A DNA stretch of 64,000 nucleotides. Source: Octopus sinensis. Lineage: Eukaryota. The translations under genes and the position numbers were made by a program. The notes beneath the pieces are model-generated. The model worked only from the letters and a program-made list of their open reading frames with translations, searched no databases and was not told the DNA's origin. The stretch is taken from NCBI RefSeq assembly GCF_006345805.1, contig NC_042997.1, positions 134,478,001-134,542,000 of the forward strand, written 5' to 3'. Of the stretch, positions 12,541 to 37,508 are shown one piece after another (position 1 is the stretch's first letter; each line of letters begins with the position of its first letter).

Positions 12541-12563
<23 letters not shown>

Positions 12564-13105
12564 GGACCTTATAACGCTTTTGTTGAACGCATACATAATA
12601 GTTACTTTACAGTTATAGATCTAGGCTATCACTGACATGCTAAAGAACATATGAAATATATCGTCATAATATTCCTTGTGAAATATGATTATTGAAACTG
12701 AAGAAGTGTAGAACAATATCATTCTGTTGAGGCAAACGCCTAGTTTGAAAGCGTCAAGGCGAGGTAGTATTAGTCGTAACACCATCGTCATGGCTTTAAT
12801 ATTTGCGTTATTCAAATTATGTAAAACTCACAAAGCAATATACATTTACAATAGAATAATAAATAAATAGCCATATTATTTCTACTTTCCCTGAATGAAT
12901 AGTTCTAGAGAAATCGCGAGCCATGCACACCAGAATGGTCGTCACATTGACTTACTTTATGTGTATAAAAAACGTCACAACCTATTTCTTCTCCTAACTT
13001 ACAACGAGTTGAGCAAAATATTGAAATATTCTTGCTAGATGTTTGATATAAATCTATATATTATGTCTTAATATAAAAACCGAATAGTATATACACTTAT
13101 GATTA

Positions 13106-13139
<34 letters not shown>

Positions 13140-13598
13140 TCATTAGAATAAGTATAATTATAATAAAGTGAGCATTTTATTGACAAAACTTTAACTACAA
13201 ACTACAAATAATAGTAAATATTTCTGTAATTATAATGAAATACTTTAGATAGAAATACTAGAAAAAAATAGAAAATAAAAAGCATAGAAAGATGTTACTC
13301 ATATTGGACAGTAGTTATTCGGGAAACCTGTGGAAATTGAGAGACATTATTAATCTAATTACATTGATGTCAATAACAATTAATGAATGACATCATTTGA
13401 GCCAATAGTTACGTATTCGTAAAGAGAAGTCTGCATGTTTACGCTTAAGTGGCGCTTGGACATCCTACTATATGTAAGTCTAGGATGTAAATATTTCCGT
13501 TGTGATTTGTTATTCTACCGTCGTTTTATGCCTTTAACCCCCGAACATTAGGCATGATGTTTCCTTGTGAGTAGTTTTCGGTGTGATATATATACATG

Positions 13599-13637
13599 TA
13601 TATAAACAAACACATGCATGCAGGCTAATATCATTCC
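13599..13637 (+). promoter_or_regulatory. Core promoter of IL17-a1 (TATA box plus initiator-like motif); duplicate near 32381-32419
   Basis: TATATAAA at 13599-13606, TCATTCC at 13631 (~30 nt downstream), ATG 132 nt after the TATA start. Confidence 0.6.
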
Positions 13638-13730
13638 AAATCTGTACTCCACTGCGGAACGAACACATCTCATTTGTAATATATCTTACTGTTGCCGTCT
13701 CTTTTTCTTTCCAAGTGAACTAACAACGCA

Positions 13731-15166
13731 ATGAAGATAACTAAGGTAAGTCAACTTAAATTAATATCAATTATCATATTATCTGTGTATGTGTGTATGT
13801 ACTTCTAAATACATTATTTCTTACATATATTCAGCAAATAAAGGCGGCGATGTAATCGACTTAATCCGTTTGTCTATCCTTGTTTGTCCCCTCTATGTTT
13901 AGCCCCTTGTGGGTAGTAAAGAAATATATATTCAGCAACTTAAATTTGGTGGTTCAACAAATCAGAAGTCGAAACTTGATATCCAGTTATTTTGATCTCA
14001 GAAAATCTTAATTTAAGTATGAGTATAGAATCGCGCCTCCAATATATATTGCACTGTTGTCCTTAAGAGTAATTATAAATTAATAACAATTTCTTAACAT
14101 TTACGTACATATAAACTTATTTCCAGAAGCTATTGTTGTGAAACACTCGCTCTAAACACAAGTAGTTTCAGATTTAGTCTAGCTGCGTGGCACACTGGGC
14201 TGGTGATTTCTACTGACCCAGGTAAGCTGACATCTGGTGAGCGAACTTAGTAGAGGGAAACTGTGAAGAATCTCGTCATATATATATATATATATTGTTT
14301 CTTATTAGGATTTTAATGCTCACTAAAATCATATATGAATAAAAATTCTTGAATGTGTTGTGTATTGTAAGCATGTTATTTAATTTATACATCATTTCAT
14401 TATATTTCACCGTTCATAATTTTCAGTGATGTCTAGTAGTAATTGTAAATATATCAAGCATATCATAAATAAGGTATTAACTATTTTCATTGACATCTGA
14501 TTCGATATTCTCTACAACTTTCTGCTTGTAAGAATTCAGTCTTTTGTATAAAATCTAGTTTTGGGGGGGATTAAAGGATGATAAATACATTACAAATACA
14601 TATTTATTTACGCTATTTGAGCTTAATTCTTCTTTCTCTTATAGATGCTCCCCCAGATTGTAATCTTCCCAGCCTTCAATGTCATCTTGTTCGTCGCCTC
14701 GGCGTCAATTCCAAGCCAATGTGAAATACCAACATCTCTGAAAGTTCATTTCGAGAGTCTGCCCAGAGCAGACATGGGTAATAATTTTTTTCTACCAGTG
14801 GAATTTCTTCGAGCCGAAAAGATCTTGACCCCACTAAGCGATGGAAATCAAACTAGTCCAGAATCTAATGATTCTTCCGGTAACATACGTGAAAGTTCAA
14901 CCTCTCCTTGGTACCTGAAAACTACCTATAATTCAACACTTTACTTTCCAACACATACTGAAGCTGTGTGTCCTTGCAATAATTGTCAGGACAGTAACCA
15001 CAATCATCATTGTGCTAAAATTTTTTCTAAAATAACTGTCCTCAAACGTACACGTGAATGTGTTGGTGAACTGTGTGTATATAAACCAATTGTAATTGAT
15101 GTAGCAACAGCTTGTGTATGTGCACGGAAAGTCAGATTCACAAATAAAGGAAATGAAAAACTATGA
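13731..15166 (+). CDS. IL17: IL-17-like cytokine, type a, copy 1 (exon 1 13731-13745, exon 2 14645-15166; 178 aa)
   Basis: ATGAAGATAACTAAG|GTAAGT and TTTCTCTTATAG|ATGCTC give a phase-0 intron and signal peptide MKITKMLPQIVIFPAFNVILFVASA. IL-17 cystine-knot motifs STSPWY, EAVCPC..C and ACVC. Confidence 0.88.
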
Positions 15167-15761
15167 GGAAAATGAACAATGCTCAAATGGAGAGTTATTC
15201 AAGATCGCTTAAGTAGAGGACTATATGCTTAGTATATTTTGTACACATACACACACGCACACACACGCACGCATGTATGCGCACACATACATACATGCAT
15301 GCATACGTACACACACATTATATATGAATATATAAAATTACCTAATTACATACACGTAACATATATGTACACAAAACACATGTATACATATACGTGCATA
15401 TATACATACATGCACACGCATACATACATAGAGGCATACATACATATATACATACATACATACATATACGTACACTCACTCGTATATTATACAATGTTAA
15501 ACCATTGTTTATAATGATTTCCCTCTCCTTAGATCCGATGCAATAGTAAGTACCAGTGATATACTACGACTGATTCAATCAAATATATTGTACTCGGTTA
15601 AATTTTTATCATCGTATCAGTGTATGAAACTATAATTATCCGGTGACTCAAGTTATTTGTCAGAACCACGGTAGGTTTCTTACATCGAGGTTTCCTACAT
15701 CGAGCTGATATGTCTGGTTGGTTCGTGTCACAAATCCTTTTTACTCTACTCAACTATATAA

Positions 15762-16020
15762 AATAAATAAATGCGCCCTTTTAATGCCTAGCCAGGCTCA
15801 TGGGCCCGCTTTCCCGGTTTCAATGGCGTATGTATTTCCCAGCTGGACGGGACGCCAGTCCATCGCAGCGTTACTCATTTTTGCCAGCTGAGTGGACTGG
15901 AGCAACATGAAATGATGTGTGTTGCTCAAGAACACAACGCGTCGCCCGGTCCAGGAATCGAAACCACAATCTTACGATCATGGTGCTAACACCCTAACCA
16001 CTAAGCCTCCACACTCAACC
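15762..16020 (-). mobile_element. tRNA-derived SINE, second family; copies at 34543-34800 and 54150-54435
   Basis: Minus-strand head with TGGTTAGGG...GGTTTCGATTCC and tail GGGCGCATTTATTTATTT. Confidence 0.75.
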
Positions 16021-16530
16021 ATATACGCATTCTTAAAATATGTGTTTTCTTCAAGACAAATTTTTTTCTACGTACGCTGGTTTATTTATGATCTAAACCC
16101 CTTTGTACCAACATACCTGTATCCGTCCGTATTTCTCTGATACAAATTTCTATCGAAATTTCATGTTCCAAAGTGCGGAAAATTATGATAGCCTTTTCTG
16201 AAGATCTTTTCATTATTTTCAGTATTGACACGCAGTCAATCAATTTCCACAGAAATATGCTAACCGAATTGTTAATATGATAACAAGTTTTAATTCGTGA
16301 ATATATAGGAGTGTCTTGAACTGCAACAAGATAGACTGTATATCCGATTTGGACCACCAAGAGTTGCAGTTAAGTTCTGATCTTTGTGGATCTTAAAATG
16401 TCTTTTGAGTCCTCCGTTACATTGACAGACCTTCTGGCATACATTGCATTGAAAGGTGTGCACCGACATTTAGGCAGAATATTTTTTTTTATTATACATA
16501 TCCTTAAAAGTATATAAATGTATATTTTTA

Positions 16531-16589
<59 letters not shown>

Positions 16590-17519
16590 TATATGTAAAT
16601 CTTATTTTATTTATATTCTTTAATTACAGATCTTTTACTTCTTATAAAAATATATATACATATATATTTATATATATAAAACACAACGCACGTGCATACA
16701 AGCACTCATACTTTTTACAATCGTATTCTCATTTTTTATAGCATGTTTATTTATATATATTTTTTATATATTTGAAATTCATATTTTGTTCATGGTAAAT
16801 ATTCACTTCTACTTCAATATTTATTTATTTCTTATGTAATATTAATTTTTTTTATTATTTATAACAATTTTGTATAGCCGAATGTCAATTGTAAATATAT
16901 CTAAATGCATTTTATATCTCTATCAGATGCTTTTTATAATTCGTGAAACAAGAAGAGATAGTTATAAATTTGTACTATATTGTAATTTAATTTATCATTA
17001 AATGCAGCTTTCTTTGTAACCAATAAAATACATTATTAAATCAAATCTTATTTCTTTGTATTTTCACTTCAGCATGTTTTTCTTGAACTTGTTATAGTAA
17101 TCTAAACTGTACCCTACTTAACTCGATGATTCGATTTAGTAATGGGCTACCAGATGTCTGAATGAATCCTTTTAACTCGTTTTATATATTTATATCATTA
17201 AGATTTTAAAATTTGTTTACATTGTTGGTGTAATAAATACATACATTTGGAAATTTTACCTCTCCTGTCCTAGAAACCTGTCCAAACGAAGTTAACCATC
17301 ATCTGATAACCGCAAAAATTATATTTATGTATAATCGTTTGTAGCGATTCTAAATATGTCGACACCTTGTTTAGGTGTGATATGATTTCACAAGGAGTAA
17401 TTCACCGGTAGAGATGAAAAAAAAATAATGGCGAGGAACAACGAAATCGATGAGTGTATGTAACCAAATAGATTTTAAGTATCCATTAACATAGGTTTAA
17501 AATATTTGCACATGTTCAG

Positions 17520-17780
17520 CAATGTCGGTATTAAATCGACCCCAGTGCTCAACGGGTACTTAACTTATCGATCCCAAAATGATGGAAGGCAAAGTTGACG
17601 CCTGTGGTATTTGAACTCAGAAAGTAAAGACGACGAAATGTCACTAAGTATCTTTGCCAGCGTGCTAATGACTCTGCCAGCTCACCATTCTAAATTTCAA
17701 TCATTGACACAGCTAGTAACATCGGGGGTAGGAGCTAAATCGATTAGATCGACCCCAGTGCTCAACCAGTATTTATTTAA
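17520..17780 (-). mobile_element. Degenerate SINE fragments (third family); copy at ~36300-36560
   Basis: ATCGACCCCAGTGC...AAGGCAAAGTTGAC...TTTGAACTCAG, the reverse complement of the element at 49745. Confidence 0.65.
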
Positions 17781-18181
17781 TCGACACCAAAAGGATGGAA
17801 GGCATTTTGGGGTTCATGAACTTTCAGTTGGCTGGTTTACCTAATCCGCGTACGTTGTCACGCCTGATAATTTAGTTCTCTCTATAGCACTATGATTCTC
17901 TATACAGGAAATTAGTTTAATTAAAATAAAGAATAGAGAATATCATTTTTTAAATTATTATTTACGCAGTCATTTAATTTCCTATATTTTTCGTCTACGT
18001 GACGTTTCCACCGCTATCAGGGCGCACCTTATAATACATTATGATGCTACAATCAATCAAGGGCTTCTTCGGGATATTTTGACCGTAGGCATCAAATATA
18101 AGAAGTTAAATGACTGCATAAATTATAGTAAAAAATTGGATATTCTCTATTGTGTTTTCCTTAAACTGATACATTATTGTA

Positions 18182-18279
<98 letters not shown>

Positions 18280-18505
18280 TGCGTGTGTGTAATGAATACA
18301 TGTATATATAATTTAGAGAAAAAAATTTTTTTAATCAATAAAGTACAATAAATAGTAAATAGTAGTATTTACTATATACTAGTTATTGTACTTTATTGAT
18401 TTTTAGAATAAGATTTTTTATAGTATGTTTTATATATGGTGTGAATAACATCTTTCTTTATTGAATTGTTTAATAGAGGTTTTCCTCTAAACTATATACA
18501 TGTAT

Positions 18506-18563
<58 letters not shown>

Positions 18564-18729
18564 ATGTATGATACAAGTCTTTGGTGTAGCAATTGCACGC
18601 GGCTGAAGAAGGCTTTTGAACTATTTGTTATGTCGATTATGCATTGATGTAAGAATAAGTTGTTCTATAAAGCCCGAAACATATGTACCGCAACATCCTT
18701 TGTGTCCTGTTTTTTATTTATTTCATTTG

Positions 18730-18772
<43 letters not shown>

Positions 18773-18933
18773 CGACGGGCTTCTTTCATTTCCTGTCTAC
18801 CAACTCCACTCACGACGCATTAGTCCGCCCAAGGCTATAGTAGAAGACACTTGCCCAAGTTGCCACGCAGTGGGACTGAACCCAGAACCATGTAGTTGGG
18901 AAGCACGTTTCTCACCATACAGCCACGCCTGCG

Positions 18934-18996
<63 letters not shown>

Positions 18997-19100
18997 TCAA
19001 ATATGAATTAGAATCAGTTAGAGGTATATGACCAAAATCGAACACTTATACACAAGATGTGTGTGTGTGTTGTTAGTTCGTAGGTTTGTATTTCGTTTTA

Positions 19101-19335
19101 GGTGTTAAAAACACCTGAAAGTAAGTCATAGGTAGGTCCCTTTTCCGGAGCAACATACATCGATGCGTATACGATTTTGCTTATATACTTCGAACATTAA
19201 ACAATATACAGTTAGGCGATTTGAGAATATATTCTCTAATCGCCTAACTGTATACGCAAAATCGTATACGCATCGATGTATGTTGCTCTGGAAAAGGGAC
19301 CTACCTATGACTTACTTTCAGGTGTTTTTAACACC
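19101..19335. repeat. 235-bp foldback/MITE-like element with nested inner hairpin; copy at 37856-38090
   Basis: ~80-bp arms (GGTGTTAAAAACACCTGAAAG...CGATTTTGC) with one mismatch, plus an inner stem TATACAGTTAGGCGATT / AATCGCCTAACTGTATA. Confidence 0.9.
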
Positions 19336-19394
19336 AGGCACATTCAGCTCTATTTATACAGCTGATGAGGAATATGTTGTCTTTTAGTGAACAA

Positions 19395-20189
19395 CTAGCA
19401 GCATAGCCCGGCGTTGCCCGGGTATGTAAGAAACTTTGTCGATAAGCAATGTCCTTTACCTTTTTACCCTTTTTTGTACTCATTGAACCATTATTTTGTA
19501 AAATGAAGCCTAAAAGGCATTAAGGCATTCAAGGCACCGTTTCCTTGCATGCATGAAGAAAATCTATGACAGTCAAAGTGCATTTTCTCGTTTTGCTTAG
19601 CACACCCAATCCAGTTCTTAAAATATCGCAGAAAAATCGGTTTGCTATATGATGTAATTAACCGATTTTTTCCAGTAATAACGTATCCTATTGGAATTAA
19701 AAGGGCCATATAGCTCCTTGGAGCAGACATGATGCTCGCTGTGAATTTCAAAAAAATTCCTGCCAATTTGTTAAAGATATTGTCGAAAATATGTCATCTT
19801 GAATTTGAACGCGATTTCCCAAAATGGCAGGATTTTATCGATTTTTTCTGATGGTAAGGTATTGCATGGAAAACTAACGTTAGAATTAAGTTCCTTAGGG
19901 TAACATTAAGTTTCCCCATCAGTTTGGTGAAAATCGATTGCAAGTTGCGAAAACTACAACGGAAAATGTGTTGCATAGGATAAGCTTAGATTCCCGACCC
20001 CATGTCGAATTTATCGATTTTTTCAGAACTGGGGAACTTTTCAAAATTTTCGATGAGTTAGTTTTGAATTATGACATTGGGCTATGTGTGTGTCAAGTTT
20101 CATCAGAATCGGTTCAAAGCGGTAGTCAGGGTGAGAGTACAACCTGATAGACACACAGACAGACAAACTGCCTTTTATGTATACAGAGA
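19395..20189 (-). mobile_element. Non-autonomous Helitron, 795 bp
   Basis: Minus strand A|TC ... CCCGG-GCAACG-CCGGG hairpin ... CTAG|T. Inserted at AT with no TSD; GACA repeats near the 5' end. Confidence 0.8.
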
Positions 20190-22087
20190 TTACTGCACAC
20201 TTCTGGCAACAGTAACACTTGTGTATGAAATTCGAAAATGGCGATTGATGAAAGTTAAAAATTTATCAATAAATACGTGATTCGCTTTTCATGCTGGCAC
20301 TGTGTTGTCTTTTCGAGCATGGTTGTTGTTTTCCTTTACATGATATTTATAGATCTTCTTACGACCCTTTCTAATGATTCTTTATATCTTAGTTGTAAAG
20401 GTAACACAGATGTACCAGAAAAGACCTGAACATCTTCACATTCACGAAAACCTCCTGCAAAAAAATAAGAAAGAAAATTTTCTTCTTTGAAACATAGAAG
20501 TGCAAATGAAGAGCAAAAATTCATCCTCTAATTATTTCCGACGGAAAGGAGTGTGGACAATATTTTACCAATGCAAACTGCGATCGTTTTTCAGTGTGAT
20601 ATATATTCCTAATATCTACACAGGTATTCTAAATATACTAGACAACAGTTACAGGACTGCATGGATATTCTACATATTGGAAAGTAAATAAAATTATTTT
20701 AAAAATACAAACTGACAGAACTAGCAACAGCATCTAGGCTATCTCCCAGTGAGATAATGAGCCTAGCAGTGCATAATTATCTTGACTTGTGAAAGAAAAT
20801 AAATAATGCTAGATGGTCCCGGTGTGCTCAAGATAAACTCCGGTGTTCTCTCATTAAGCACCCCCTCCAATGTTCTCTCAAAATGGTCCAATGTTTACTC
20901 TTTAAATATTCTCCAGACTCCTTTCGTTAAATGACTTCACCCCCCGGTGATCTCGTGTTAAACTTTCCCGCGGTGAACTCTAGTTAAACGTTCTTTGGTG
21001 TCATTTTTATTATTTATGGTTCAGGAGGTATAATGAGTGTTTCTTTCCTTAAAACACCGTGGAGGACATGACCAAGAATTTTCAAGCTCAACAGATGATG
21101 AACAACATACATAATATGAACAAAAATGTCCTAGATTAGCATGGGATGTATGCAGATCTAAAGTTTTCGTTGGAACAAAAATGCTGTAAATTTAAAGCAT
21201 CATATGTCCAAGCGATCTAACAATAGGCAGACCTTAAAAAAACAACAAAAATGGAGGCTTAAGAAAATTCGACAAAATGTGTGAATAAAATCTGTATCCC
21301 ACTGAAAACATAATGGGTTTCAGAGTAATGTGACCGACTAACGAGTGCAATATACACGTTTATCAGAACGTATTTCAAGATTCTAGGTAAAATATTTTCG
21401 AAAGACTCTCTCAAACCTGCGAATGACAGAGTATGATTGTCGAAGTGCTACAATGAGTTTATTAACAGACGAAAGAAAGTTAATATGAGAGCACACAAAG
21501 ACTTTACTAAGCCACTCAAATTAGTGAATGCTAACAGGTACCGTTAGGTGCTTCAGAACTCAGTAGTTGAGGATGCACATAATATTTTGTCTATATTGGA
21601 GAATATTTTCATATCTCCATTACTGAAATTATTCATTGTTTGACATAAAGTATATAGTTGCTAAGACCATGGTGGTGATGATTAAAAGTAGTGAATGATG
21701 GCATCATTGTCGGTGGAGTATATATGGTTAGTCTTCGTAGAATATCGGTACTCACAACTCTCTCACAGCATATCTTTTCTCGGCAGTTGTCGACTGGAAA
21801 TGCTAACTGCATCAGTCTCAAGAGGAACTCTTCCTGTATGACAATCGCCAGTCTTGGGACGCCTGTGAAGTTTATGGCACGCAGACTTATGAAAATAACG
21901 AACTTGCACTGCTCCACGCTTTACATTTGGAAACAAACACCCGTGCTAGATTATCTACATCCTCTTAATGTAGCTATGGAAAGAATCATAATTTTTCGTT
22001 TCTTGAAATTTCTCATCGTTCCAATAATAACCGTTCGAATTACTCTGACGATCTTGTCTTTTCGAAAACAATTTAAATATTTTAAAT

Positions 22088-22243
22088 GAGTGGCTGTGTG
22101 GTAAGTAGCTTGCGTACGAACTACATGGTTCCGGGTTCAGTCCCACTACGTGGCACCTTGGGCAAATGTATTCTACTATAGCTTCAGGCCGACCAAAGCT
22201 TTGTGAGTGGATTTGGTAGACGGAAACTGAAAGAAGCCCATCG

Positions 22244-22299
<56 letters not shown>

Positions 22300-22528
22300 T
22301 GTGTGTGTATGTCTTTGTATGTCCGTGTTTGTCTGTCCCCACCAACGTCGCTTGACAACCGATGCTGGTGTGTTTACGTCCCCGTAAATTAGCGGTTCGG
22401 CAAAGTGACCGATAGAATAAGTAGTAGGCTTACAAAGAATAAGTTCTGGGGTCGATGTGCTCGACTAAAGGCGGTGCTCCAGTATGGCCGCAGTCAAATG
22501 ACTGAAACAAGTAAAAAAAAAAAGAGTA
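22088..22528 (+). mobile_element. Composite SINE (only in unit A)
   Basis: Same family as 8854-9264. Confidence 0.85.
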
Positions 22529-23126
22529 TTTAAACCAAATTTAGACCTCTCTGATTACAATGAAAAAGGAGGCTCTATATGTATTAATATATTAACTGGT
22601 GACGTATTTTCGGTAGTTATGGTACAAGAAAAACTACGAAGCACATCAGAGATTATGTGTATTAATGATTCTTATATAATAATATATACTTCTAAACTTT
22701 TTCCTAGCAAATGTAGTCGCTGCTCCAAAATCGAAGATGATATTTTGATGAAAAAGAGTTGTAAATTGATATAACTTAAAATGGTTGTTCAACCATTATA
22801 TGGAGATAAAAATGTTTGTGTTTATAAATGGAAAGCTTAGCATGTGACATTTTTACTGCTAAAGAATATGTTTAAAGCTCACTCAACCCTAGGTGTCTGA
22901 TGGATGGTTATAACTGAACGCCTTTGTTTCTATTTCTGTTCCGTCATAACTACCATTGGGTTAAACATGAACGACGTAAACATTCACAACTTAAAAAATG
23001 ATTTGCCTCAGAATTGTACACTCCGTCACGCCCAAACACACACACACACACAAAAGCCACGCGCGCATGCTCATGAAAATGTAAATATACGGCAGAGAAA
23101 GATTAAAGAGTTATAATGTTTATATT

Positions 23127-23544
23127 ACTCTTTTACTTGTTTCAGTCATTTGACGGCGGCCGTGCTGGTGCACCGCCTTTAGTCGAGAAAATCGACCCCA
23201 AGACTTATTCTTTGTAAGCCTACTACTTATTCTATCGGTCTCTTTGCCGAACCGCTAATTTACGGGGACGTAAACACACCAGCATCGGTTGTCAAGCGAT
23301 GTTGGGGGGATAAACACAGACACACAAACATATACACACACATCCATCCATCCATATATATATATATATATACATATCCATATATACGATAGGCTTCTTT
23401 CAGTTTCCGTCTACCAAATCCACTCACAAGGCTTTGGTGGGCCCGAGGCAATAGTAGAAGACACTTGCCGAAGATTTTACACAGTGAGACTGAACCCGGA
23501 ACCATGTGGCTGGTAAGCAAGCTAATTACCATACAACCACTCCA
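23127..23544 (-). mobile_element. Composite SINE (only in unit A), inverted relative to 22088-22528
   Basis: Reverse complement of the 8854 family. Confidence 0.85.
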
Positions 23545-23994: not shown

Positions 23995-24043
<49 letters not shown>

Positions 24044-26742: not shown

Positions 26743-27215
26743 ATCTGAACAAACGGTATAACGGCTATTCTAAGCTGCGTATAATGCAAAGTTTGTTTAT
26801 CTGATTACAGAGACAGAACGACACACACACACACAGAGGCACACACACACAGACACACACACACACACGTAACTATAATGTATTTGAAACATTTTTGACA
26901 CGTATCAGAAATTATTCTTTTATCACTTCTTCAATGCATGCAAATTGATTTTTAAAACATATTGTCGATATTTTTGCCGTTAGCACGTATCATAAGATGA
27001 AGACTATTCGATAAGAAAAAATAATAATAAAAACAAAAGCCACCACAATTGTTTTGCTCTTGAACACAAATATATTCTCCTTTTCAAAATTGATTTCGGC
27101 TAGTGCAATGGCAGTTGTTTATTACAAATGTAATTTTTTTTTCGAGCAAACTTGCGCTGAAAACTCGGTGATAACAGCTCGCCACAAAAGCAGTTATATA
27201 GAATTCAATAAACTA

Positions 27216-27775
27216 TTGGGTTGTCCGGAAAGTTTGTGCCGATTTTTAAAGGAAAGAAAAAGTTCAATAAATACTTGCCATTACATTTTTAATCAACCAA
27301 ATATGAATCATTTTGTTGCACAATGCGTCTCCATCTTTCCTTAACTTGAAAATACCCTCTGCACAGGACTGAGGTGGTTTCATGGCAAAGAATTCATCAA
27401 GGTATCTTTTTACGTCATCCAAGGAATTGAAATTTTTGCCATTAACACTGTTCTGCAGAGACCTGAATAAACGGAAATCCGAAGGAGCAATATCTGGTGA
27501 ATATGGAGGGTGGGATAACACATCTCAGCCGAGGTGCAGCAACTTTTGTCTGGTTCCCAAAGCATCAAGTGCCGAAAATGCACTTTCTTATCTTTTAAAG
27601 GGTTACAGAATTTACACAGGTTATTGGAACATATATCTTCTTTCACGAAAATATAGCTTAAACTGTGATCTAAATAGAGGTGTAGTCAAATCCTATTTTA
27701 TGGACTCAACCATGTTCTAAAATAAGTCGAAAGGTAAGCTACTATAAATTGGCACGAACTTTCCGGACAACCCAA
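27216..27775 (-). mobile_element. Internally deleted mariner element (560 bp)
   Basis: TA|TTGGGTTGTCCGGAAAGTTTGTGCC ... GGCACGAACTTTCCGGACAACCCAA|TA TIRs with TA TSD; transposase C-terminus HPPYSPDIAPSDFRLF. Confidence 0.92.
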
Positions 27776-28469
27776 TACACTATTTGCCGACAGTTTACTT
27801 CATTGGTGCAAGTGATCAATATTTAAAACCTGAAGGTTACCCAGAAAATCGTTATTCTAAAAATTTTTTTTTTAGAAACTATATTATTTTCTTCGTTTCT
27901 TTAGTTTGCTGAAATTACAGGATTAATTGCATTTCAGAGGTACAGCTTCTAATGTTTAATTAGTGGTATGGACCCAAGTGACCTAAGTGCTATTTATCTT
28001 AATTTAAACCTATCCATCGAGCCGCTTGCGATAATAGCTTTTAGTGTCACTGAAAGACTTGCGCCATTACATTCACTCATGCAGTAATTCTACAAGGCAT
28101 ATTAAATAAATTTCGGCAAGAAAACTATATGGAGCGAATATGTCAAGATACCAATTTACATAAATATATATATCAGCAATAATAATAATGAAAAGGATTA
28201 TTACGAAGTGCCATAGCATTGCCTTTAATTGTTTTTATATATAAATAGCTTTGCACAGACCTACAGGTTTCAACAACACCGATTAGTAAACGTTGCAATT
28301 GCAAGCTTACTATAACACTGGCGCAGTTTCTTCGAGGATCTTTACTTCATATCCTTTGATTTAATCGTTTGAAGTTTTTCATTCATCTACTTTGCGTTGT
28401 ACAATATAGAGTTGCTCGTTGAATTAGACGCGAGCTATCTTCGTTTCAAGTGTTTATTGGACAATTACT

Positions 28470-28850
28470 TTTATTCTTTTACTTGTTTCAGTCATTTAAC
28501 TGCGGCCATGCTGGAGCATCGACTTTAGTCAAGCAAACCGACCCCAGGACTTATTCTTTGTAAGCCTAGTACTTATTCTATCGGTCTCTTTTGCCGAACC
28601 CCTAAGTTACGGGGACATAAAAACACCAGCATCTGTTGTCAAGCGATGTTGGGGGGGGGGACGAACACAGACACACAAACAAATACACACACACATATAT
28701 ATATATAGGTATACATATATACGACGGGATTCTTTCAGTTTCCGTCTACGAAATCCACTCACAATGCTTTGGTCGACCCGAGGCTATAGTAGAAGACACT
28801 CGCCCAAGGTGCGATGCAGTGGGTCTGAACCCGGAACCATGTGGTTGGTA
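28470..28850 (-). mobile_element. Composite SINE; copy at ~45625-46010
   Basis: Reverse complement of the 8854 family. Confidence 0.85.
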
Positions 28851-30814
28851 ACATTATTTCAAAACAATTTGTTGTTTAAATGTTTATCATTAATTAAATG
28901 TGAATTTCCTCGTCTCAAAGTTTGTTCCGTTCTAGAATTTATTACATTACCCTTAGATGGAAAAATTTGGTAAATTTCTTCTAAGCATAAGCCACATATT
29001 TTTGTTCCTGGTCTTTATGGTTTTGCAGTACAAATTCGCAATTAACAGTACAGTCATTGTTTCTGTCTTTAAGAGACCAGGTTAATTTCTTAAGACTTGT
29101 TTTGGAATATTTCATTTTTATCTCTAAAAGATAAGAGCATTAGATTCGTTGGAAAAAAAAGCAGCGTATGTAAACGAAAACAAGGACGAAAAACATACAA
29201 ATACAAATAAAATACAAATAACAGGACATAACAGCTGGTGTCTTTCGACTAAGAACGAATCAAATTAAGCTGGCGTGTGTGGAAGTAAAGCTTTACGGCA
29301 TGGATACAAGATTTCACAGGCACAGGGAAGAAAATAGATGTTGCACGGACAGCGGCCGAACCAAGAAAGAAAGGTCATTTATATATAATAAATTCATAAA
29401 TAAAATAAAACATATGCATATATACATACATATATGTACGCACCTACCTCTACATGTATATATACATGCGTATTTGGTTACAGAACACCAAAAAAACGTC
29501 GAACACATTTTTCTTAAAAAACGAAAAAATAGAGTACAGGACATACAATACAAGGAAAATTCCCCTTCTTCAGTCGCCTTTGTTTCATCTACTCCGCGTT
29601 TCGAAGGTCAAGGCGAGACACGTCTTTAATGAAACTTTCCTTCTCGCGAAAAACAAATTAGATAAAATTTGAGATTTTTTTGCGGATGGGTAAAAATGGT
29701 AACAAAAACAGGACAGTAACGACAGTACAGAATATAAACAGTAAAAGACAGGACAAGGAAAATAACAGTAACACAGACAAGAAGGGCTATTAAGCTGAAC
29801 GAGATAAAATATTACGAACGCTATATTTGAGAACGGCGATGGATCCACAGAAAATGCCGTCTACACTTGAAGGAAGCCAGGTTAGAAAGACAGTAGCAGA
29901 GCTCTTGTCGCGGGTCAACGACGGGAGGGAGGAGGAGGAGCAAGAGAAAGGGAGAGAAAAAAGGGAATGGATATATACATGTAGAGGTAGGTGCGTACAT
30001 ATATGCATGTTTTATTTTATTTATTAATTTATTATATGACGGAACGCACGCATCCATTTCTAAGTAAGATTGTTCTTAATATTAATAATGATGCTCACTC
30101 TTAACCTTTCTGTTCCCCCTCCCTTTCTCAGCTTTCATTCTTTCGGGTTTCCTTTTCTTCTACCTTACTGTCTCTCGCTCCCTCTCTCTCTCTCATTCTT
30201 CATTCTTTCTGATTTTCTCTACAACCATTCCCTTTTTTCTCTCCCTTTCTCTTGCTCCTCCTCCTCCCTCCCGTCGTTGACCCGCGACGAGAGTTCTGCT
30301 ACTGTCTTTCCGACCTGGCTTCCTTCAAGTGTAGACGGCATTTTCTGTGGATACTTCACCGTTCTCAAATATAGCGTTCGTAATATTTTATCTCGTTCGG
30401 CTTAACAGTCCTTCTTGTCTGTGTTACTGTTATTCTCCTTCTCCTGTCTTTTATTGTTTATATTTTGTACTATCATTACAGTCCTGTTTTTGTTACCATT
30501 TTTACCCTCCGCAAAAAAATCTCAAATTTTATTTAATTTGTTTTTCGCGGGAAGGAAAAGTTCACAAAAGACGTGTCTCGCCTTGACCTTCGAAACGCGG
30601 AGTAGATGAAACAAAGGCGACTGAAGAATGTCCATTTACTTGGTTTTGTGTTTATGTTTTCGCTTCTCATTGTTTTCCTGTACTCATATATGCATGGATA
30701 TATTCATGTAGAGGTAGGTGCGTGCATATATGTATGTATATATGCATATGTTTTATTTTATTTATTAATTTATTATATGACGGACGCACGCATCCATTTC
30801 TAAGTAAGATTGTT

Positions 30815-30850
<36 letters not shown>

Positions 30851-31020
30851 GTGTCACTAAAGTGTCAAGGAGTGCAACGTGGTACCGGCATGGCAAGAAA
30901 TAAGAGTCAAAACATTCGATAAGCACAAATGCACTACCATTTTGAAATCAGCGTATGAGTTCAACGGTTTTCTTATAAGCTGACAAGGTGAATTGAATAT
31001 AAATCAAGACGTGGTAAGGG

Positions 31021-31068
<48 letters not shown>

Positions 31069-31312
31069 AATATTAGGGAATAAATCCAAATTTACAGGGA
31101 AAAAATCAGATTTAGGATTAAATCCAATTTTATAGTAAAATATTATATAATATTAATTAGAGACAAAACCACTATTTTGTAAAACAACAAGGAAAGACTT
31201 AATCAATACATAAAATTTTAATAAAATTTTTTATTTTTTACTTTTTATAAAATTTTATGTATTGATTAAGTCTTTCCTTGTTTGTTTTACAAAATAGTGG
31301 TTTTGTCTCTAA

Positions 31313-31367
<55 letters not shown>

Positions 31368-32512
31368 ATATAGGACCTTATAACGCTTTTGTTGAACGCA
31401 TACATAATAGTTACTTTACAGTTACATGCTAAAGAACATATGAAATATATCGTCATAATATTCCTTGTGAAATATGATTATTGAAACTGAAGAAGTGTAG
31501 AACAATATCATTCTGTTGAGGCAAACGCCTAGTTTGAAAGCGTCAAGGCGAGGTAGTATTAGTCGTAACACCATCGTCATGCTTTAATATTTGCGTTATT
31601 CAAATTATGTAAAACTCACAAAGCAATATACATTTACAATAGAATAATAAATAAATAGCCATATTATTTCTACTTTCCCTGAATGAATAGTTCTAGAGAA
31701 ATCGCGAGCCATGCACACCAGAATGGTCGTCACATTGACTTACTTTATGTGTATAAAAAACGTCACAACCTATTTCTTCTCCTAACTTACAACGAGTTGA
31801 GCAAAATATTGAAATATTCTTGCTAGATGTTTGATATAAATCTATATATTATGTCTTAATATAAAAACCGAATAGTATATACACTTATGATTATGATATA
31901 TATATATATATATATATAGTATCATTAGAATAAGTATAATTATAATAAAGTGAGCATTTTATTGACAAAACTTTAACTACAAACTACAAATAATAGTAAA
32001 TATTTCTGTAATTATAATGAAATACTTTAGATAGAAATACTAGAAAAAAATAGAAAATAAAAAGCATAGAAAGATGTTACTCATATTGGACAGTAGTTAT
32101 TCGGGAAACCTGTGGAAATTGAGAGACATTATTAATCTAATTACATTGATGTCAATAACAATTAATGAATGACATCATTTGAGCCAATAGTTACGTATTC
32201 GTAAAGAGAAGTCTGCATGTTTACGCTTAAGTGGCGCTTGGACATCCTACTATATGTAAGTCTAGGATGTAAATATTTCCGTTGTGATTTGTTATTCTAC
32301 CGTCGTTTTATGCCTTTAACCCCCGAACATTAGGCATGATGTTTCCTTGTGAGTAGTTTTCGGTGTGATATATATACATGTATATAAACAAACACATGCA
32401 TGCAGGCTAATATCATTCCAAATCTGTACTCCACTGCGGAACGAACACATCTCATTTGTAATATATCTTACTGTTGCCGTCTCTTTTTCTTTCCAAGTGA
32501 ACTAACAACGCA

Positions 32513-33948
32513 ATGAAGATAACTAAGGTAAGTCAACTTAAATTAATATCAATTATCATATTATCTGTGTATGTGTGTATGTACTTCTAAATACATTATT
32601 TCTTACATATATTCAGCAAATAAAGGCGGCGATGTAATCGACTTAATCCGTTTGTCTATCCTTGTTTGTCCCCTCTATGTTTAGCCCCTTGTGGGTAGTA
32701 AAGAAATATATATTCAGCAACTTAAATTTGGTGGTTCAACAAATCAGAAGTCGAAACTTGATATCCAGTTATTTTGATCTCAGAAAATCTTAATTTAAGT
32801 ATGAGTATAGAATCGCGCCTCCAATATATATTGCACTGTTGTCCTTAAGAGTAATTATAAATTAATAACAATTTCTTAACATTTACGTACATATAAACTT
32901 ATTTCCAGAAGCTATTGTTGTGAAACACTCGCTCTAAACACAAGTAGTTTCAGATTTAGTCTAGCTGCGTGGCACACTGGGCTGGTGATTTCTACTGACC
33001 CAGGTAAGCTGACATCTGGTGAGCGAACTTAGTAGAGGGAAACTGTGAAGAATCTCGTCATATATATATATATATATTGTTTCTTATTAGGATTTTAATG
33101 CTCACTAAAATCATATATGAATAAAAATTCTTGAATGTGTTGTGTATTGTAAGCATGTTATTTAATTTATACATCATTTCATTATATTTCACCGTTCATA
33201 ATTTTCAGTGATGTCTAGTAGTAATTGTAAATATATCAAGCATATCATAAATAAGGTATTAACTATTTTCATTGACATCTGATTCGATATTCTCTACAAC
33301 TTTCTGCTTGTAAGAATTCAGTCTTTTGTATAAAATCTAGTTTTGGGGGGGATTAAAGGATGATAAATACATTACAAATACATATTTATTTACGCTATTT
33401 GAGCTTAATTCTTCTTTCTCTTATAGATGCTCCCCCAGATTGTAATCTTCCCAGCCTTCAATGTCATCTTGTTCGTCGCCTCGGCGTCAATTCCAAGCCA
33501 ATGTGAAATACCAACATCTCTGAAAGTTCATTTCGAGAGTCTGCCCAGAGCAGACATGGGTAATAATTTTTTTCTACCAGTGGAATTTCTTCGAGCCGAA
33601 AAGATCTTGACCCCACTAAGCGATGGAAATCAAACTAGTCCAGAATCTAATGATTCTTCCGGTAACATACGTGAAAGTTCAACCTCTCCTTGGTACCTGA
33701 AAACTACCTATAATTCAACACTTTACTTTCCAACACATACTGAAGCTGTGTGTCCTTGCAATAATTGTCAGGACAGTAACCACAATCATCATTGTGCTAA
33801 AATTTTTTCTAAAATAACTGTCCTCAAACGTACACGTGAATGTGTTGGTGAACTGTGTGTATATAAACCAATTGTAATTGATGTAGCAACAGCTTGTGTA
33901 TGTGCACGGAAAGTCAGATTCACAAATAAAGGAAATGAAAAACTATGA
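32513..33948 (+). CDS. IL17: IL-17-like cytokine, type a, copy 2 (exon 1 32513-32527, exon 2 33427-33948; 178 aa)
   Basis: Protein identical to copy 1, with the same splice sites. Confidence 0.88.
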
Positions 33949-35312
33949 GGAAAATGAACAATGCTCAAATGGAGAGTTATTCAAGATCGCTTAAGTAGAG
34001 GACTATATGCTTAGTATATTTTGTACACATACACACACGCACACACACGCACGCATGTATGCGCACACATACATACATGCATGCATACGTACACACACAT
34101 TATATATGAATATATAAAATTACCTAATTACATACACGTAACATATATGTACACAAAACACATGTATACATATACGTGCATATATACATACATGCACACG
34201 CATACATACATAGAGGCATACATACATATATACATACATACATACATATACGTACACTCACTCGTATATTATACAATGTTAAACCATTGTTTATAATGAT
34301 TTCCCTCTCCTTAGATCCGATGCAATAGTAAGTACCAGTGATATACTACGACTGATTCAATCAAATATATTGTACTCGGTTAAATTTTTATCATCGTATC
34401 AGTGTATGAAACTATAATTATCCGGTGACTCAAGTTATTTGTCAGAACCACGGTAGGTTTCTTACATCGAGGTTTCCTACATCGAGCTGATATGTCTGGT
34501 TGGTTCGTGTCACAAATCCTTTTTACTCTACTCAACTATATAAAATAAATAAATGCGCCCTTTTAATGCCTAGCCAGGCTCATGGGCCCGCTTTCCCGGT
34601 TTCAATGGCGTATGTATTTCCCAGCTGGACGGGACGCCAGTCCATCGCAGCGTTACTCATTTTTGCCAGCTGAGTGGACTGGAGCAACATGAAATGATGT
34701 GTGTTGCTCAAGAACACAACGCGTCGCCCGGTCCAGGAATCGAAACCACAATCTTACGATCATGGTGCTAACACCCTAACCACTAAGCCTCCACACTCAA
34801 CCATATACGCATTCTTAAAATATGTGTTTTCTTCAAGACAAATTTTTTTCTACGTACGCTGGTTTATTTATGATCTAAACCCCTTTGTACCAACATACCT
34901 GTATCCGTCCGTATTTCTCTGATACAAATTTCTATCGAAATTTCATGTTCCAAAGTGCGGAAAATTATGATAGCCTTTTCTGAAGATCTTTTCATTATTT
35001 TCAGTATTGACACGCAGTCAATCAATTTCCACAGAAATATGCTAACCGAATTGTTAATATGATAACAAGTTTTAATTCGTGAATATATAGGAGTGTCTTG
35101 AACTGCAACAAGATAGACTGTATATCCGATTTGGACCACCAAGAGTTGCAGTTAAGTTCTGATCTTTGTGGATCTTAAAATGTCTTTTGAGTCCTCCGTT
35201 ACATTGACAGACCTTCTGGCATACATTGCATTGAAAGGTGTGCACCGACATTTAGGCAGAATATTTTTTTTTATTATACATATCCTTAAAAGTATATAAA
35301 TGTATATTTTTA

Positions 35313-35371
<59 letters not shown>

Positions 35372-36963
35372 TATATGTAAATCTTATTTTATTTATATTC
35401 TTTAATTACAGATCTTTTACTTCTTATAAAAATATATATACATATATATTTATATATATAAAACACAACGCACGTGCATACAAGCACTCATACTTTTTAC
35501 AATCGTATTCTCATTTTTTATAGCATGTTTATTTATATATATTTTTTATATATTTGAAATTCATATTTTGTTCATGGTAAATATTCACTTCTACTTCAAT
35601 ATTTATTTATTTCTTATGTAATATTAATTTTTTTTATTATTTATAACAATTTTGTATAGCCGAATGTCAATTGTAAATATATCTAAATGCATTTTATATC
35701 TCTATCAGATGCTTTTTATAATTCGTGAAACAAGAAGAGATAGTTATAAATTTGTACTATATTGTAATTTAATTTATCATTAAATGCAGCTTTCTTTGTA
35801 ACCAATAAAATACATTATTAAATCAAATCTTATTTCTTTGTATTTTCACTTCAGCATGTTTTTCTTGAACTTGTTATAGTAATCTAAACTGTACCCTACT
35901 TAACTCGATGATTCGATTTAGTAATGGGCTACCAGATGTCTGAATGAATCCTTTTAACTCGTTTTATATATTTATATCATTAAGATTTTAAAATTTGTTT
36001 ACATTGTTGGTGTAATAAATACATACATTTGGAAATTTTACCTCTCCTGTCCTAGAAACCTGTCCAAACGAAGTTAACCATCATCTGATAACCGCAAAAA
36101 TTATATTTATGTATAATCGTTTGTAGCGATTCTAAATATGTCGACACCTTGTTTAGGTGTGATATGATTTCACAAGGAGTAATTCACCGGTAGAGATGAA
36201 AAAAAAATAATGGCGAGGAACAACGAAATCGATGAGTGTATGTAACCAAATAGATTTTAAGTATCCATTAACATAGGTTTAAAATATTTGCACATGTTCA
36301 GCAATGTCGGTATTAAATCGACCCCAGTGCTCAACGGGTACTTAACTTATCGATCCCAAAATGATGGAAGGCAAAGTTGACGCCTGTGGTATTTGAACTC
36401 AGAAAGTAAAGACGACGAAATGTCACTAAGTATCTTTGCCAGCGTGCTAATGACTCTGCCAGCTCACCATTCTAAATTTCAATCATTGACACAGCTAGTA
36501 ACATCGGGGGTAGGAGCTAAATCGATTAGATCGACCCCAGTGCTCAACCAGTATTTATTTAATCGACACCAAAAGGATGGAAGGCATTTTGGGGTTCATG
36601 AACTTTCAGTTGGCTGGTTTACCTAATCCGCGTACGTTGTCACGCCTGATAATTTAGTTCTCTCTATAGCACTATGATTCTCTATACAGGAAATTAGTTT
36701 AATTAAAATAAAGAATAGAGAATATCATTTTTTAAATTATTATTTACGCAGTCATTTAATTTCCTATATTTTTCGTCTACGTGACGTTTCCACCGCTATC
36801 AGGGCGCACCTTATAATACATTATGATGCTACAATCAATCAAGGGCTTCTTCGGGATATTTTGACCGTAGGCATCAAATATAAGAAGTTAAATGACTGCA
36901 TAAATTATAGTAAAAAATTGGATATTCTCTATTGTGTTTTCCTTAAACTGATACATTATTGTA

Positions 36964-37061
<98 letters not shown>

Positions 37062-37508
37062 TGCGTGTGTGTAATGAATACATGTATATATAATTTAGAG
37101 AAAAAAATTTTTTTAATCAATAAAGTACAATAAATAGTAAATAGTAGTATTTACTATATACTAGTTATTGTACTTTATTGATTTTTAGAATAAGATTTTT
37201 TATAGTATGTTTTATATATGGTGTGAATAACATCTTTCTTTATTGAATTGTTTAATAGAGGTTTTCCTCTAAACTATATACATGTATGTACACACACACA
37301 CACACACACACACCACACACACACACACACACACAAACACACATGTATGATACAAGTCTTTGGTGTAGCAATTGCACGCGGCTGAAGAAGGCTTTTGAAC
37401 TATTTGTTATGTCGATTATGCATTGATGTAAGAATAAGTTGTTCTATAAAGCCCGAAACATATGTACCGCAACATCCTTTGTGTCCTGTTTTTTATTTAT
37501 TTCATTTG

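What the first reader, a model, noticed from the sequence alone, without database searches (positions are those of the whole stretch)
12850..37480. A ~6 kb core around IL17-a is essentially identical between units while both flanks have diverged
Seen: I found no substitutions by eye between ~12850-18700 and ~31630-37480 other than microsatellite lengths, and the IL17-a proteins are identical. Segments 10344-12700 and beyond ~18800 carry many substitutions and indels. A single duplication event should give uniform divergence. Inference: a recent gene-conversion or unequal-crossover tract homogenised IL17-a (dosage), while its neighbour IL17-b diversified. The alternative is a polishing or collapse artefact.
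Basis: partly seen in the sequence, partly recalled or inferred. Interest (0 to 1): 0.7.

Follow-up and report, generated by a model that had tools for sequence, protein, structure and literature searches.

The report
Homogenised IL-17 core in octopus duplication
Two tandem 18-kb copies of an octopus IL-17 cytokine gene pair differ by about 2% at their edges but are virtually identical over a central 6.7–9.6 kb around one gene, which is the ordinary signature of recent gene conversion between neighbouring duplicates (provided the assembly is correct).

Summary
The window is Octopus sinensis chromosome CM016859.1:134,478,001-134,542,000, inside a large IL-17 gene cluster. It holds a direct tandem duplication: unit A 10340-29127 and unit B 29128-46315. 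Each unit carries IL17-a and IL17-b.

- There are no substitutions across A 12078-18803 (6.7 kb).
- There are only 4 substitutions across A 11320-20916 (9.6 kb).
- Non-coding DNA outside this tract differs by 1.98%. The chance probability of such a run is about 1e-34.

The real boundaries are about 10.9-11.3 kb and 20.9 kb.

The tract is internal, bounded on both sides. It nearly fills the longest uninterrupted homology block, and its divergence is nested in tiers. The best explanation is recent, possibly repeated, non-allelic gene conversion or a double unequal exchange.

IL17-b did diversify. Its exon 2 differs by 5.9%, with 26 nonsynonymous and 5 synonymous changes that avoid the cystine-knot core.

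"Dosage selection" is untested. An assembly artefact is less likely but not excluded without reads. Arguments against it: no gap between the units, a blunt repeat-free junction, and flank divergence at or above the O. sinensis–O. vulgaris divergence.

This is an ordinary phenomenon in a known tandem family, of modest interest.

The parts
10340..29127 (+). Tandem-duplication unit A (18,788 bp): IL17-a copy A followed by IL17-b copy A
   Evidence: Self-BLAST and MAFFT. The left end lies inside a repeat copy (10308-10588) that is truncated in unit B.
29128..46315 (+). Tandem-duplication unit B (about 17.2 kb): IL17-a copy B followed by IL17-b copy B. The A|B junction is at 29127|29128. It is blunt (...TCTCTAA|AAGATAAGAGC...), with no shared repeat at the boundaries and no N in the window.
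12078..18803 (.). Zero-substitution core, copy A (6,726 bp). Within it, 12793-18803 differs from B only at 3 of 10 microsatellites.
30860..37576 (.). Zero-substitution core, copy B
11320..20916 (.). Whole low-divergence (homogenised) tract, copy A: 4 substitutions in 9,528 ungapped columns. The left edge is fuzzy (10899-11320). The right edge is sharp, marked by an 11-bp indel at 20892 and then dense substitutions from 20917.
30096..39671 (.). Whole low-divergence tract, copy B
10340..11319 (.). Diverged left flank of the unit: 14 substitutions in 964 columns (1.45%), partly clustered at 10439-10471 and 10896-10898. B equivalent is 29128-30095.
20917..21732 (.). Diverged right margin of the 11.4-kb homology block: 15 substitutions in 815 columns (1.84%). 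B equivalent is 39672-40486.
21884..23558 (.). A-only 1,675-bp segment holding two inverted copies of a ~420-bp dispersed repeat (22088-22532, 23115-23543). Together with the B-only segment it ends the uninterrupted homology.
40487..40962 (.). B-only 476-bp segment
13731..15166 (+). IL17-a copy A. Exon 1 is 13731-13745 (MKITK, GT donor). Exon 2 is 14645-15166, stop included. The product is 178 aa and equals XP_029649312.1/XP_029649528.1.
32513..33948 (+). IL17-a copy B (exon 1 32513-32527, exon 2 33427-33948), identical to copy A in exons and intron
23932..26742 (+). IL17-b copy A. Exon 1 is 23932-23946 (MKKLA). Exon 2 is 26215-26742. The product is 180 aa and equals XP_029649403.2.
41488..43931 (+). 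IL17-b copy B. Exon 1 is 41488-41502 and exon 2 is 43392-43931. The predicted product is 184 aa, with intact frame and splice sites, and differs from copy A at 29 aligned positions including a 2-codon indel and a stop shifted by 2 codons. It is not present in the protein databases searched.

Best explanation
An 18-19 kb segment carrying two IL-17 genes (a, b) was duplicated in tandem by a blunt, non-homologous junction. Judged by about 2% non-coding divergence, this happened at roughly the time of, or somewhat before, the O. sinensis/O. vulgaris split.

Much later, non-allelic homologous recombination between the misaligned units overwrote one copy with the other. The mechanism was long-tract gene conversion during break repair, or equivalently two unequal exchanges. 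The overwritten stretch was about 9.6 kb of the 11.4-kb uninterrupted homology block. A second, still younger event, or patchy mismatch repair at the ends of a single event, left an inner 6.0-6.7 kb with no substitutions at all.

IL17-a lies inside the tract and is therefore present as two identical genes. IL17-b lies beyond a block of large insertions and deletions that interrupts homology. It escaped homogenisation and diverged quickly at the protein level.

Shown here: the duplication structure, the tract, its two boundaries, the divergence tiers, and the fast evolution of IL17-b. Inferred: the recombination mechanism, the timing, and the reality of both copies in the animal.
For: 1. Divergence is 0 in 6,687 columns in the core and 4 in 9,528 in the tract, against 124 in 6,275 (1.98%) in non-coding DNA outside. 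The permutation maximum run was 1,405 columns and analytic P is about 1e-34.

2. Both sides are diverged. The left flank has at least 7 independent events in 964 bp, where 0.4 are expected at the tract rate (P = 2.5e-7). The right side runs at 1.8-2.3%. The patch is therefore internal, as conversion predicts and a single crossover does not.

3. The tract sits inside the longest uninterrupted homology block (10340-21732). It leaves margins of about 0.6-1.0 kb on the left and 0.8 kb on the right. The block ends at the duplication junction and at A-only and B-only indels. This is the geometry expected of homology-dependent repair.

4. Divergence is tiered. All 4 substitutions and all non-microsatellite indels of the tract lie in its outer 2.8-3.6 kb. 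P(0 substitutions in the core at the shoulder rate) is 8e-5, and P(all 4 substitutions in the shoulders) is 0.008.

5. The duplication looks real. The junction is blunt with no repeat that could mislead an assembler. The window has no N. The unit start is a repeat copy that is complete in A and truncated in B.

6. A/B flank divergence (2.0%, plus kb-scale indels) is at or above the orthologous O. sinensis-O. vulgaris non-coding divergence measured about 210 kb away (328/25,429 = 1.29%). That is hard to reconcile with A and B being two alleles.

7. The core holds no other recognisable gene or RNA and is not a dispersed repeat. Constraint or transposition therefore does not explain its identity.
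Against: - No reads, read depth or second assembly could be consulted. The existence of two copies in one haplotype, and the exact zero in the core, rest on a single PacBio-era assembly.
- Seven of ten long microsatellites in the inner core have identical lengths in both copies, including (TA)37, (TG)33 and (CATA)17. This implies either an extremely recent event or consensus and polishing from pooled reads.
- A 6.7-9.6 kb tract is long compared with typical meiotic conversion tracts in animals (my knowledge).
- The phylogenetic test (core grouping by species, flanks by position) could not be run. No O. vulgaris ortholog is annotated in the searched databases.
- Half of the left-flank substitutions sit in two small clusters, so the left boundary rests on fewer independent events than the right.
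Confidence: 0.62

Rival explanations
1. False (heterotype) duplication. A and B are the two haplotypes of one a-b locus that the assembler laid end to end. The identical core is a stretch where the two alleles coalesce recently. The diverged parts are ordinary heterozygosity in a polymorphic immune locus.
For: - Uneven divergence along two alleles is normal and would need no conversion.
- False duplications are common in long-read assemblies built without haplotig purging, and they inflate gene families (PMC9516828).
- O. sinensis-O. vulgaris orthologous divergence is itself patchy, 0.3-3.2% per block, which hints at high ancestral polymorphism.
- IL17-b copy B is absent from the protein databases searched.
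Against: - There is no assembly gap between the copies (no N in the window). Gaps are the usual hallmark.
- The junction is blunt and has no repeat to create a spurious overlap.
- Flank divergence of 2.0%, three kb-scale indels and 14-17% protein divergence of IL17-b are at or above the between-species level of 1.29%.
Confidence: 0.13
2. Consensus or polishing homogenisation. Both copies are real, but read correction or short-read polishing with multi-mapped reads erased true paralog-specific variants in the middle of the repeat. The core is then less identical in the animal than in the assembly.
For: - Identical lengths at 7 of 10 long microsatellites are what pooled-read consensus would give.
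- The erased zone is the centre of the longest homology block, where reads are hardest to assign.
Against: - The same assembler kept about 2% divergence in the 0.8-1 kb margins of the same block and in the rest of the unit.
- At 2% divergence, reads are assignable to a copy. Erasing about 190 expected variants completely, with a sharp right edge at 20916, is implausible.
- Pooled polishing presupposes near-identity, so at most it turns 'very low' into 'zero'. That leaves the heterogeneity, and hence the conversion inference, intact.
Confidence: 0.1
3. Two ages of duplication without conversion. The core is a younger segment, either a mobile or secondarily duplicated 9.6-kb piece carrying IL17-a, that arrived at the same relative position in two older units. 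Alternatively, the flanks were made divergent by ectopic conversion from other IL-17 paralogs.
For: The locus lies in an IL-17 supercluster of at least 650 kb with many paralogs. Differences in IL17-b exon 2 are clustered.
Against: - The core has no terminal repeats and no other copies in the window.
- Collinear insertion at two homologous sites is improbable.
- The nearest annotated paralogs are at most 60% identical in protein, far too distant to donate sequence that is 95-98% identical. Flank divergence also extends evenly through non-coding DNA.
Confidence: 0.05
4. Purifying selection keeps the 6-9 kb identical.
For: None beyond the identity itself.
Against: About 85% of the tract is intron and intergenic DNA, AT-rich and full of microsatellites. 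It has no Rfam, tRNA or Pfam feature apart from IL17-a. Orthologous non-coding DNA between the two sister species differs by about 1.3%.
Confidence: 0.01

Closest known systems
Interlocus (non-allelic) gene conversion between young tandem duplicates, the classic case being the human fetal globin pair HBG1/HBG2 (from my own knowledge, not checked here)
   Same: Both are direct tandem duplicates with an internal patch of near-identity flanked by older divergence. In both, the patch is limited by the extent of homology and has an edge next to a simple-sequence repeat. Here the innermost differences lie 10 and 35 bp from (TA)n arrays (post hoc chance about 0.01).
   Different: The tract here is much longer (6.7-9.6 kb against about 1.5 kb). 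The two-tier pattern suggests repeated events. No population or outgroup data support it yet.
Tandem IL-17 arrays of marine invertebrates: 31-36 genes in Octopus bimaculoides, and 11 sea-urchin SpIL17-1 genes that are 87.1-99.8% identical (PMC8353272; PMC5457136)
   Same: The gene family, the tandem organisation and the lineage-specific expansion are the same. The gene structure also matches: two exons, with a first exon of five codons, as reported for SpIL17-4.
   Different: In the passages I read, those papers describe duplication and similarity, not a mapped conversion tract. A search for 'gene conversion' in PMC8353272 found no occurrence. Here one unit shows homogenisation of one gene and accelerated divergence of its neighbour.
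False heterotype duplications in genome assemblies (PMC9516828)
   Same: Both show two adjacent, similar copies of a gene-family member in a non-phased long-read assembly of an outbred animal, with uneven similarity along the copies.
   Different: This case has no gap between the copies, a blunt unique junction inside a contig, and divergence at or above the species level. Read depth and k-mer criteria could not be tested.

Membership tests
IL-17 cytokine family (Pfam PF06083) | IL17 domain scoring above Pfam's gathering score | tested here: met
   IL17-a scores 38.7 bits, IL17-b copy A 51.5 bits and IL17-b copy B 48.8 bits, against a cut-off of 24.
IL-17 cytokine family (Pfam PF06083) | Sequence-profile relationship to solved IL-17 structures | tested here: met
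   A profile of 14 octopus IL-17s matches human IL-17F (E = 2.7e-8) and IL-17A (E about 3e-6). No other molecule appears in the list.
IL-17 cytokine family (Pfam PF06083) | Cystine-knot-like beta fold | tested here: inconclusive
   The AlphaFold model of IL17-a has mean pLDDT 60, with 65-85 in the C-terminal beta core. All top Foldseek PDB hits are IL-17A/F, but TM-scores are only 0.33-0.62.
IL-17 cytokine family (Pfam PF06083) | Conserved cysteines of the C-terminal knot | tested here: met
   C114, C119, C128, C144, C162 and C164 are invariant in the 14-sequence alignment. IL17-a lacks two other conserved Cys (KTC, and STCPW changed to STSPW) and gains one (GLYVY changed to ELCVY).
IL-17 cytokine family (Pfam PF06083) | Secretion and signalling through an IL-17 receptor | not testable with these tools
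   The only indication is a hydrophobic N-terminal helix (residues 8-24 of the model).
Interlocus gene conversion / concerted evolution | Internal tract of significantly lower divergence, bounded by higher divergence on both sides | tested here: met
Interlocus gene conversion / concerted evolution | Tract confined to uninterrupted homology between the paralogs | tested here: met
   The tract 10899/11320-20916 lies inside the block 10340-21732.
Interlocus gene conversion / concerted evolution | Both copies are true paralogs in one haplotype | tested here: inconclusive
   Indirect evidence only: no gap, a blunt junction, and divergence at or above species level. No reads were available.
Interlocus gene conversion / concerted evolution | Phylogenetic incongruence: the tract groups by species while the flanks group by position | not testable with these tools
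   No O. vulgaris ortholog of IL17-a or IL17-b is in the databases. O. bimaculoides is alignable only in the coding sequence, at about 70%.
False heterotype duplication | Assembly gap or depth gap between the copies | tested here: not met
   There is no N anywhere in the 64-kb window. A depth gap could not be tested.
False heterotype duplication | Haploid read depth and single-copy heterozygous k-mers | not testable with these tools
   No read data were available.
Positive (diversifying) selection on IL17-b | dN significantly above dS | tested here: inconclusive
   By the Nei-Gojobori method, dN = 0.066 and dS = 0.046, a ratio of 1.44 with Fisher p = 0.65.
Positive (diversifying) selection on IL17-b | Nonsynonymous rate above the local neutral (non-coding) rate, with the fold still constrained | tested here: met
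   Nonsynonymous differences are 26/412, against 124/6275 in non-coding DNA (p = 1.2e-6). Residues 89-118 and 125-162, the knot core, are identical. Outgroups show derived changes in both copies.

The most novel reading that the evidence does not exclude
The two-tier tract may record repeated long-tract conversion that selection maintains, because two identical doses of IL17-a are advantageous. IL17-a is an unusual IL-17 that has lost a conserved cysteine pair and gained an odd ninth cysteine. Meanwhile the neighbouring IL17-b pair, shielded from conversion by indels, is driven apart by positive selection. Concerted and diversifying evolution would then be partitioned within a single duplication unit of an invertebrate cytokine array.
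Probability: 0.12. Interest if true: 0.5.

Novelty: new member of a known kind. Interest (0 to 1): 0.3.

Why it matters
Counts of IL-17 genes in cephalopods and other marine invertebrates are used as evidence for adaptive expansion of innate immunity. This locus raises three practical points:
- Identical paralogs may reflect recent homogenisation rather than recent duplication, so ages inferred from paralog divergence are unreliable.
- Within one unit, one gene can be homogenised while its neighbour evolves faster than neutral DNA.
- Such pairs are exactly where assembly artefacts must be ruled out before gene-family counts are trusted.

The phenomenon itself is textbook, so the value is local: annotation, dating and choice of validation targets.

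Tried and rejected
Cross-species test:
- I looked for O. vulgaris or other orthologs of IL17-a and IL17-b to build segment-wise trees. None is annotated.
- The nearest O. vulgaris gene I could fetch (CAI9715943.1, L004) is orthologous to a gene about 210 kb away (L005). It served only to calibrate species divergence.
- The O. bimaculoides locus L002 aligns only in the coding sequence, at about 70%.

Independent read-derived evidence:
- Exact look-ups of the three window ORFs in the 15-billion-protein collection found nothing beyond RefSeq.

Reaching the locus through a spanning gene:
- The opposite-strand gene model that spans the region (P0016) covers 205 kb, and no DNA is returned for it.

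Other IL-17 paralog pairs:
- Two other IL-17 loci looked up (P0019 and P0008) are not adjacent duplicates within the fetched loci. I did not pursue them.

Other content in the core:
- Rfam, tRNA and Pfam scans were negative.

Transposon explanation:
- The core has no other copies in the window, so I rejected it.

Assembly methods:
- The original genome paper is not in the held library. Statements about PacBio assembly and polishing are from my own recollection.


Full report
**Identity of the window.** The IL17-a ORF is 100% identical to a RefSeq protein of Octopus sinensis. The locus fetched for that protein, from GCA_006345805.1 chromosome CM016859.1, is an exact substring of the window. The window is therefore CM016859.1:134,478,001-134,542,000. 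It has 35.9% G+C and contains no N. It lies inside an IL-17 supercluster that spans at least 134.18-134.83 Mb. Tandem IL-17 arrays in octopus and other marine invertebrates are already described (PMC8353272; PMC5457136).

**Anatomy.** Self-BLAST shows one direct tandem duplication. Unit A is 10340-29127 and unit B is 29128-46315.
- Each unit carries two two-exon IL-17 genes on the + strand. In each gene, exon 1 encodes only five residues.
- IL17-a is at 13731-13745 plus 14645-15166 in A, and 32513-32527 plus 33427-33948 in B.
- IL17-b is at 23932-23946 plus 26215-26742 in A, and 41488-41502 plus 43392-43931 in B.
- All four exon-2 ORFs pass Pfam's IL17 threshold. A profile of octopus IL-17s matches only human IL-17F and IL-17A among solved structures. 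A low-confidence model of IL17-a finds only IL-17A/F folds.
- The A|B junction is blunt, with at most 1 bp of microhomology. Only microsatellite matches exist between the sequences around the three boundaries.
- The unit begins inside a repeat copy that is complete in A (10308-10588) and truncated at the junction in B.

**Check of the observation.** The table gives substitutions per ungapped column.

| Segment (A coordinates) | Substitutions / columns | Rate |
|---|---|---|
| 10340-11319 | 14 / 964 | 1.45% |
| 11320-12077 | 2 / 757 | 0.26% |
| 12078-18803 | 0 / 6,687 | 0 |
| 18804-20916 | 2 / 2,084 | 0.10% |
| 20917-21732 | 15 / 815 | 1.84% |
| 23559-24980 | 31 / 1,415 | 2.19% |
| 25468-26214 | 10 / 731 | 1.37% |
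| IL17-b exon 2 | 31 / 528 | 5.87% |
| 26743-29127 | 54 / 2,350 | 2.30% |

- Non-coding DNA outside the tract therefore differs at 124 of 6,275 sites, or 1.98%.
- The longest substitution-free run in 20,000 permutations was 1,405 columns, against 6,687 observed. The analytic P is about 1e-34.
- The best two-rate model puts the low-rate interval at 10899/11320-20916.
True divergence starts left of about 11.3 kb and right of 20.9 kb.

**Fine structure.** Three further patterns bear on the mechanism.
- From 12793 to 18803 the only differences are three microsatellite length changes. Seven other long arrays are identical in both copies, including (TA)37, (TG)33, (AT)14 and (CATA)17.
- The shoulders (11320-12792 and 18804-20916) hold all four substitutions of the tract, five 1-bp indels, one 20-bp indel and two 11-bp indels.
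- If the four substitutions were post-event mutations spread evenly, all four would miss the central 70% with P = 0.008. At the shoulder rate, a clean core has P = 8e-5. Either two nested events of different age occurred, or one event had patchy repair near its ends.
- The innermost differences lie 10 and 35 bp from (TA)n arrays. The chance value is about 0.01, but this was noticed post hoc.
- The tract occupies the longest uninterrupted homology block (10340-21732). It leaves 0.6-1.0 kb on the left and 0.8 kb on the right. The block is ended by the duplication junction on one side and by a B-only 476-bp segment plus an A-only 1,675-bp segment on the other.

**What it most likely is.** An internal patch of near-identity, bounded on both sides and confined to continuous homology, is the signature of non-allelic homologous recombination. 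That means long-tract gene conversion or, indistinguishably, two unequal exchanges.
- A single duplication predicts uniform divergence.
- A single unequal crossover predicts one boundary only.
- Constraint is excluded. About 85% of the tract is AT-rich, microsatellite-laden non-coding DNA with no other recognisable feature.
- Transposition is excluded because the core is unique within the window.
- For calibration, an orthologous 25-kb O. sinensis/O. vulgaris comparison about 210 kb away gives 1.29% divergence, ranging 0.3-3.2% by block. The duplication (about 2%) is thus roughly as old as, or older than, the species split.
- The 95% upper bound on core divergence is 0.045%. The last homogenisation therefore falls within the most recent 2% or so of that time.

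**Artefact rivals.**
- A false heterotype duplication, with two haplotypes laid in tandem, would explain uneven divergence naturally. Such errors are common (PMC9516828).
  - Against it: there is no gap between the copies, the junction is blunt and repeat-free inside a contig, and flank divergence with kb-scale indels is at or above the between-species level.
- Consensus or polishing homogenisation could explain the exact zero and the identical microsatellite lengths.
  - It presupposes near-identity, however. It cannot explain why the same assembler kept 2% divergence in the margins of the same block.
- Neither rival can be closed without reads. Together I give them about 0.2-0.25.

**The neighbour gene.** IL17-b did diversify.
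- Exon 2 differs three times more than the surrounding non-coding DNA (p = 7e-7).
- There are 26 nonsynonymous and 5 synonymous differences. dN/dS is 1.44, which is not significantly above 1. The nonsynonymous rate is nevertheless above the local non-coding rate (p = 1.2e-6).
- The copies also differ by a 2-codon indel and a stop codon shifted by two codons.
- The changes avoid the knot core: residues 89-118 and 125-162 are identical. By comparison with O. bimaculoides and another octopod sequence, derived changes occur in both copies.
- Both copies have intact frames and splice sites. This fits two functional genes under diversifying or relaxed selection outside the fold core.
- Ectopic conversion from another paralog is unlikely. 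The nearest annotated relatives are at most 60% identical.

**What is not supported.** Nothing shows that IL17-a or its dosage was the target. The gene's coding span occupies 1.4 kb of a 9.6-kb tract whose limits track homology, not gene boundaries.

**Verdict.** The gene-conversion reading is the best explanation (about 0.6), but the boundaries need correcting and the dosage inference has no support. The phenomenon is a familiar one in a family already known to be tandemly expanded. Novelty is 'new member of a known kind' and interest is about 0.3. The decisive tests are read-level validation and the orthologous O. vulgaris locus.

Noticed in passing
window 13731-15166 and 32513-33948 (IL17-a protein): IL17-a is an atypical family member. 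It lacks two cysteines conserved in 12-13 of 14 octopus IL-17s: KTC is changed to QTS, and STCPW to STSPW, the latter being the vertebrate-like 'SPW' state. It gains a cysteine at a nearly invariant tyrosine (GLYVY changed to ELCVY), giving an odd count of nine. It also has VCPC in place of VCRC. This may mean loss of one disulfide and a free or inter-chain cysteine.
   Followed up: partly
window 41488-43931: IL17-b copy B has an intact two-exon reading frame (184 aa predicted). It is absent from RefSeq and UniRef as represented in the searched collections, so it is an apparently unannotated gene.
   Followed up: partly
window, whole length, minus strand: A RefSeq isoform (XP_036360761.1, 177 aa IL-17-like 'isoform X2') is modelled across 205 kb on the opposite strand, with the entire a-b-a-b cluster and other IL-17 genes inside one intron. 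It is probably an annotation artefact caused by a far-upstream first exon.
   Followed up: no
window 546-3700 (+) and 3740-4490: A non-LTR retrotransposon remnant, with RVT_1 at E = 1.5e-28 and zf-RVT. It is followed by a ~650-bp triplet-repeat tract that reads as poly-His, poly-Asp or poly-Met in different frames.
   Followed up: partly
window 8859-9287, 22088-22532, 23115-23543, 28463-28851, 45614-46009, 51206-51620, 51885-52303, 57097-57371, 59059-59351, 63657-64000: A ~420-bp dispersed repeat family, 75-93% identical among copies and carrying an internal dinucleotide microsatellite. At least ten copies occur in both orientations. Two inverted copies make up much of the A-only segment that ends the homology block. 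No tRNA-like head was detected.
   Followed up: no
window 10609-11195 / 11448-12002, and 29383-29970 / 30225-30778: A pair of 588-bp inverted repeats, about 86% identical, sits at the left edge of the homogenised tract in both units. A 235-bp self-complementary segment lies at 19101-19335 / 37856-38090. Such structures could promote breaks, but this was not tested.
   Followed up: no
L004 (O. vulgaris OX597814.1:131,858,410-131,885,830) vs L005 (O. sinensis CM016859.1:134,241,026-134,269,031): Orthologous divergence between the two species varies from 0.3% to 3.2% between adjacent kb-scale blocks of another IL-17 locus. A neighbouring O. vulgaris gene model, CAI9715942.1 (604 aa), is a chain of five nearly identical IL-17 N-terminal halves. 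These could reflect further homogenised or duplicated IL-17 segments, or assembly and annotation errors.
   Followed up: no
window 27267-27524 (-): The ORF fragment reading ...HPPYSPDIAPSDFRLF... looks to me like the C-terminal part of a mariner/Tc1-type transposase. Pfam gave no hit at E <= 0.01, so this is my reading only.
   Followed up: partly
window ~63616-64000: By coordinate transfer, another 178-aa IL-17 gene begins at about 63.6 kb on the + strand and continues beyond the window end. No IL17-domain exon of it lies inside the window.
   Followed up: no
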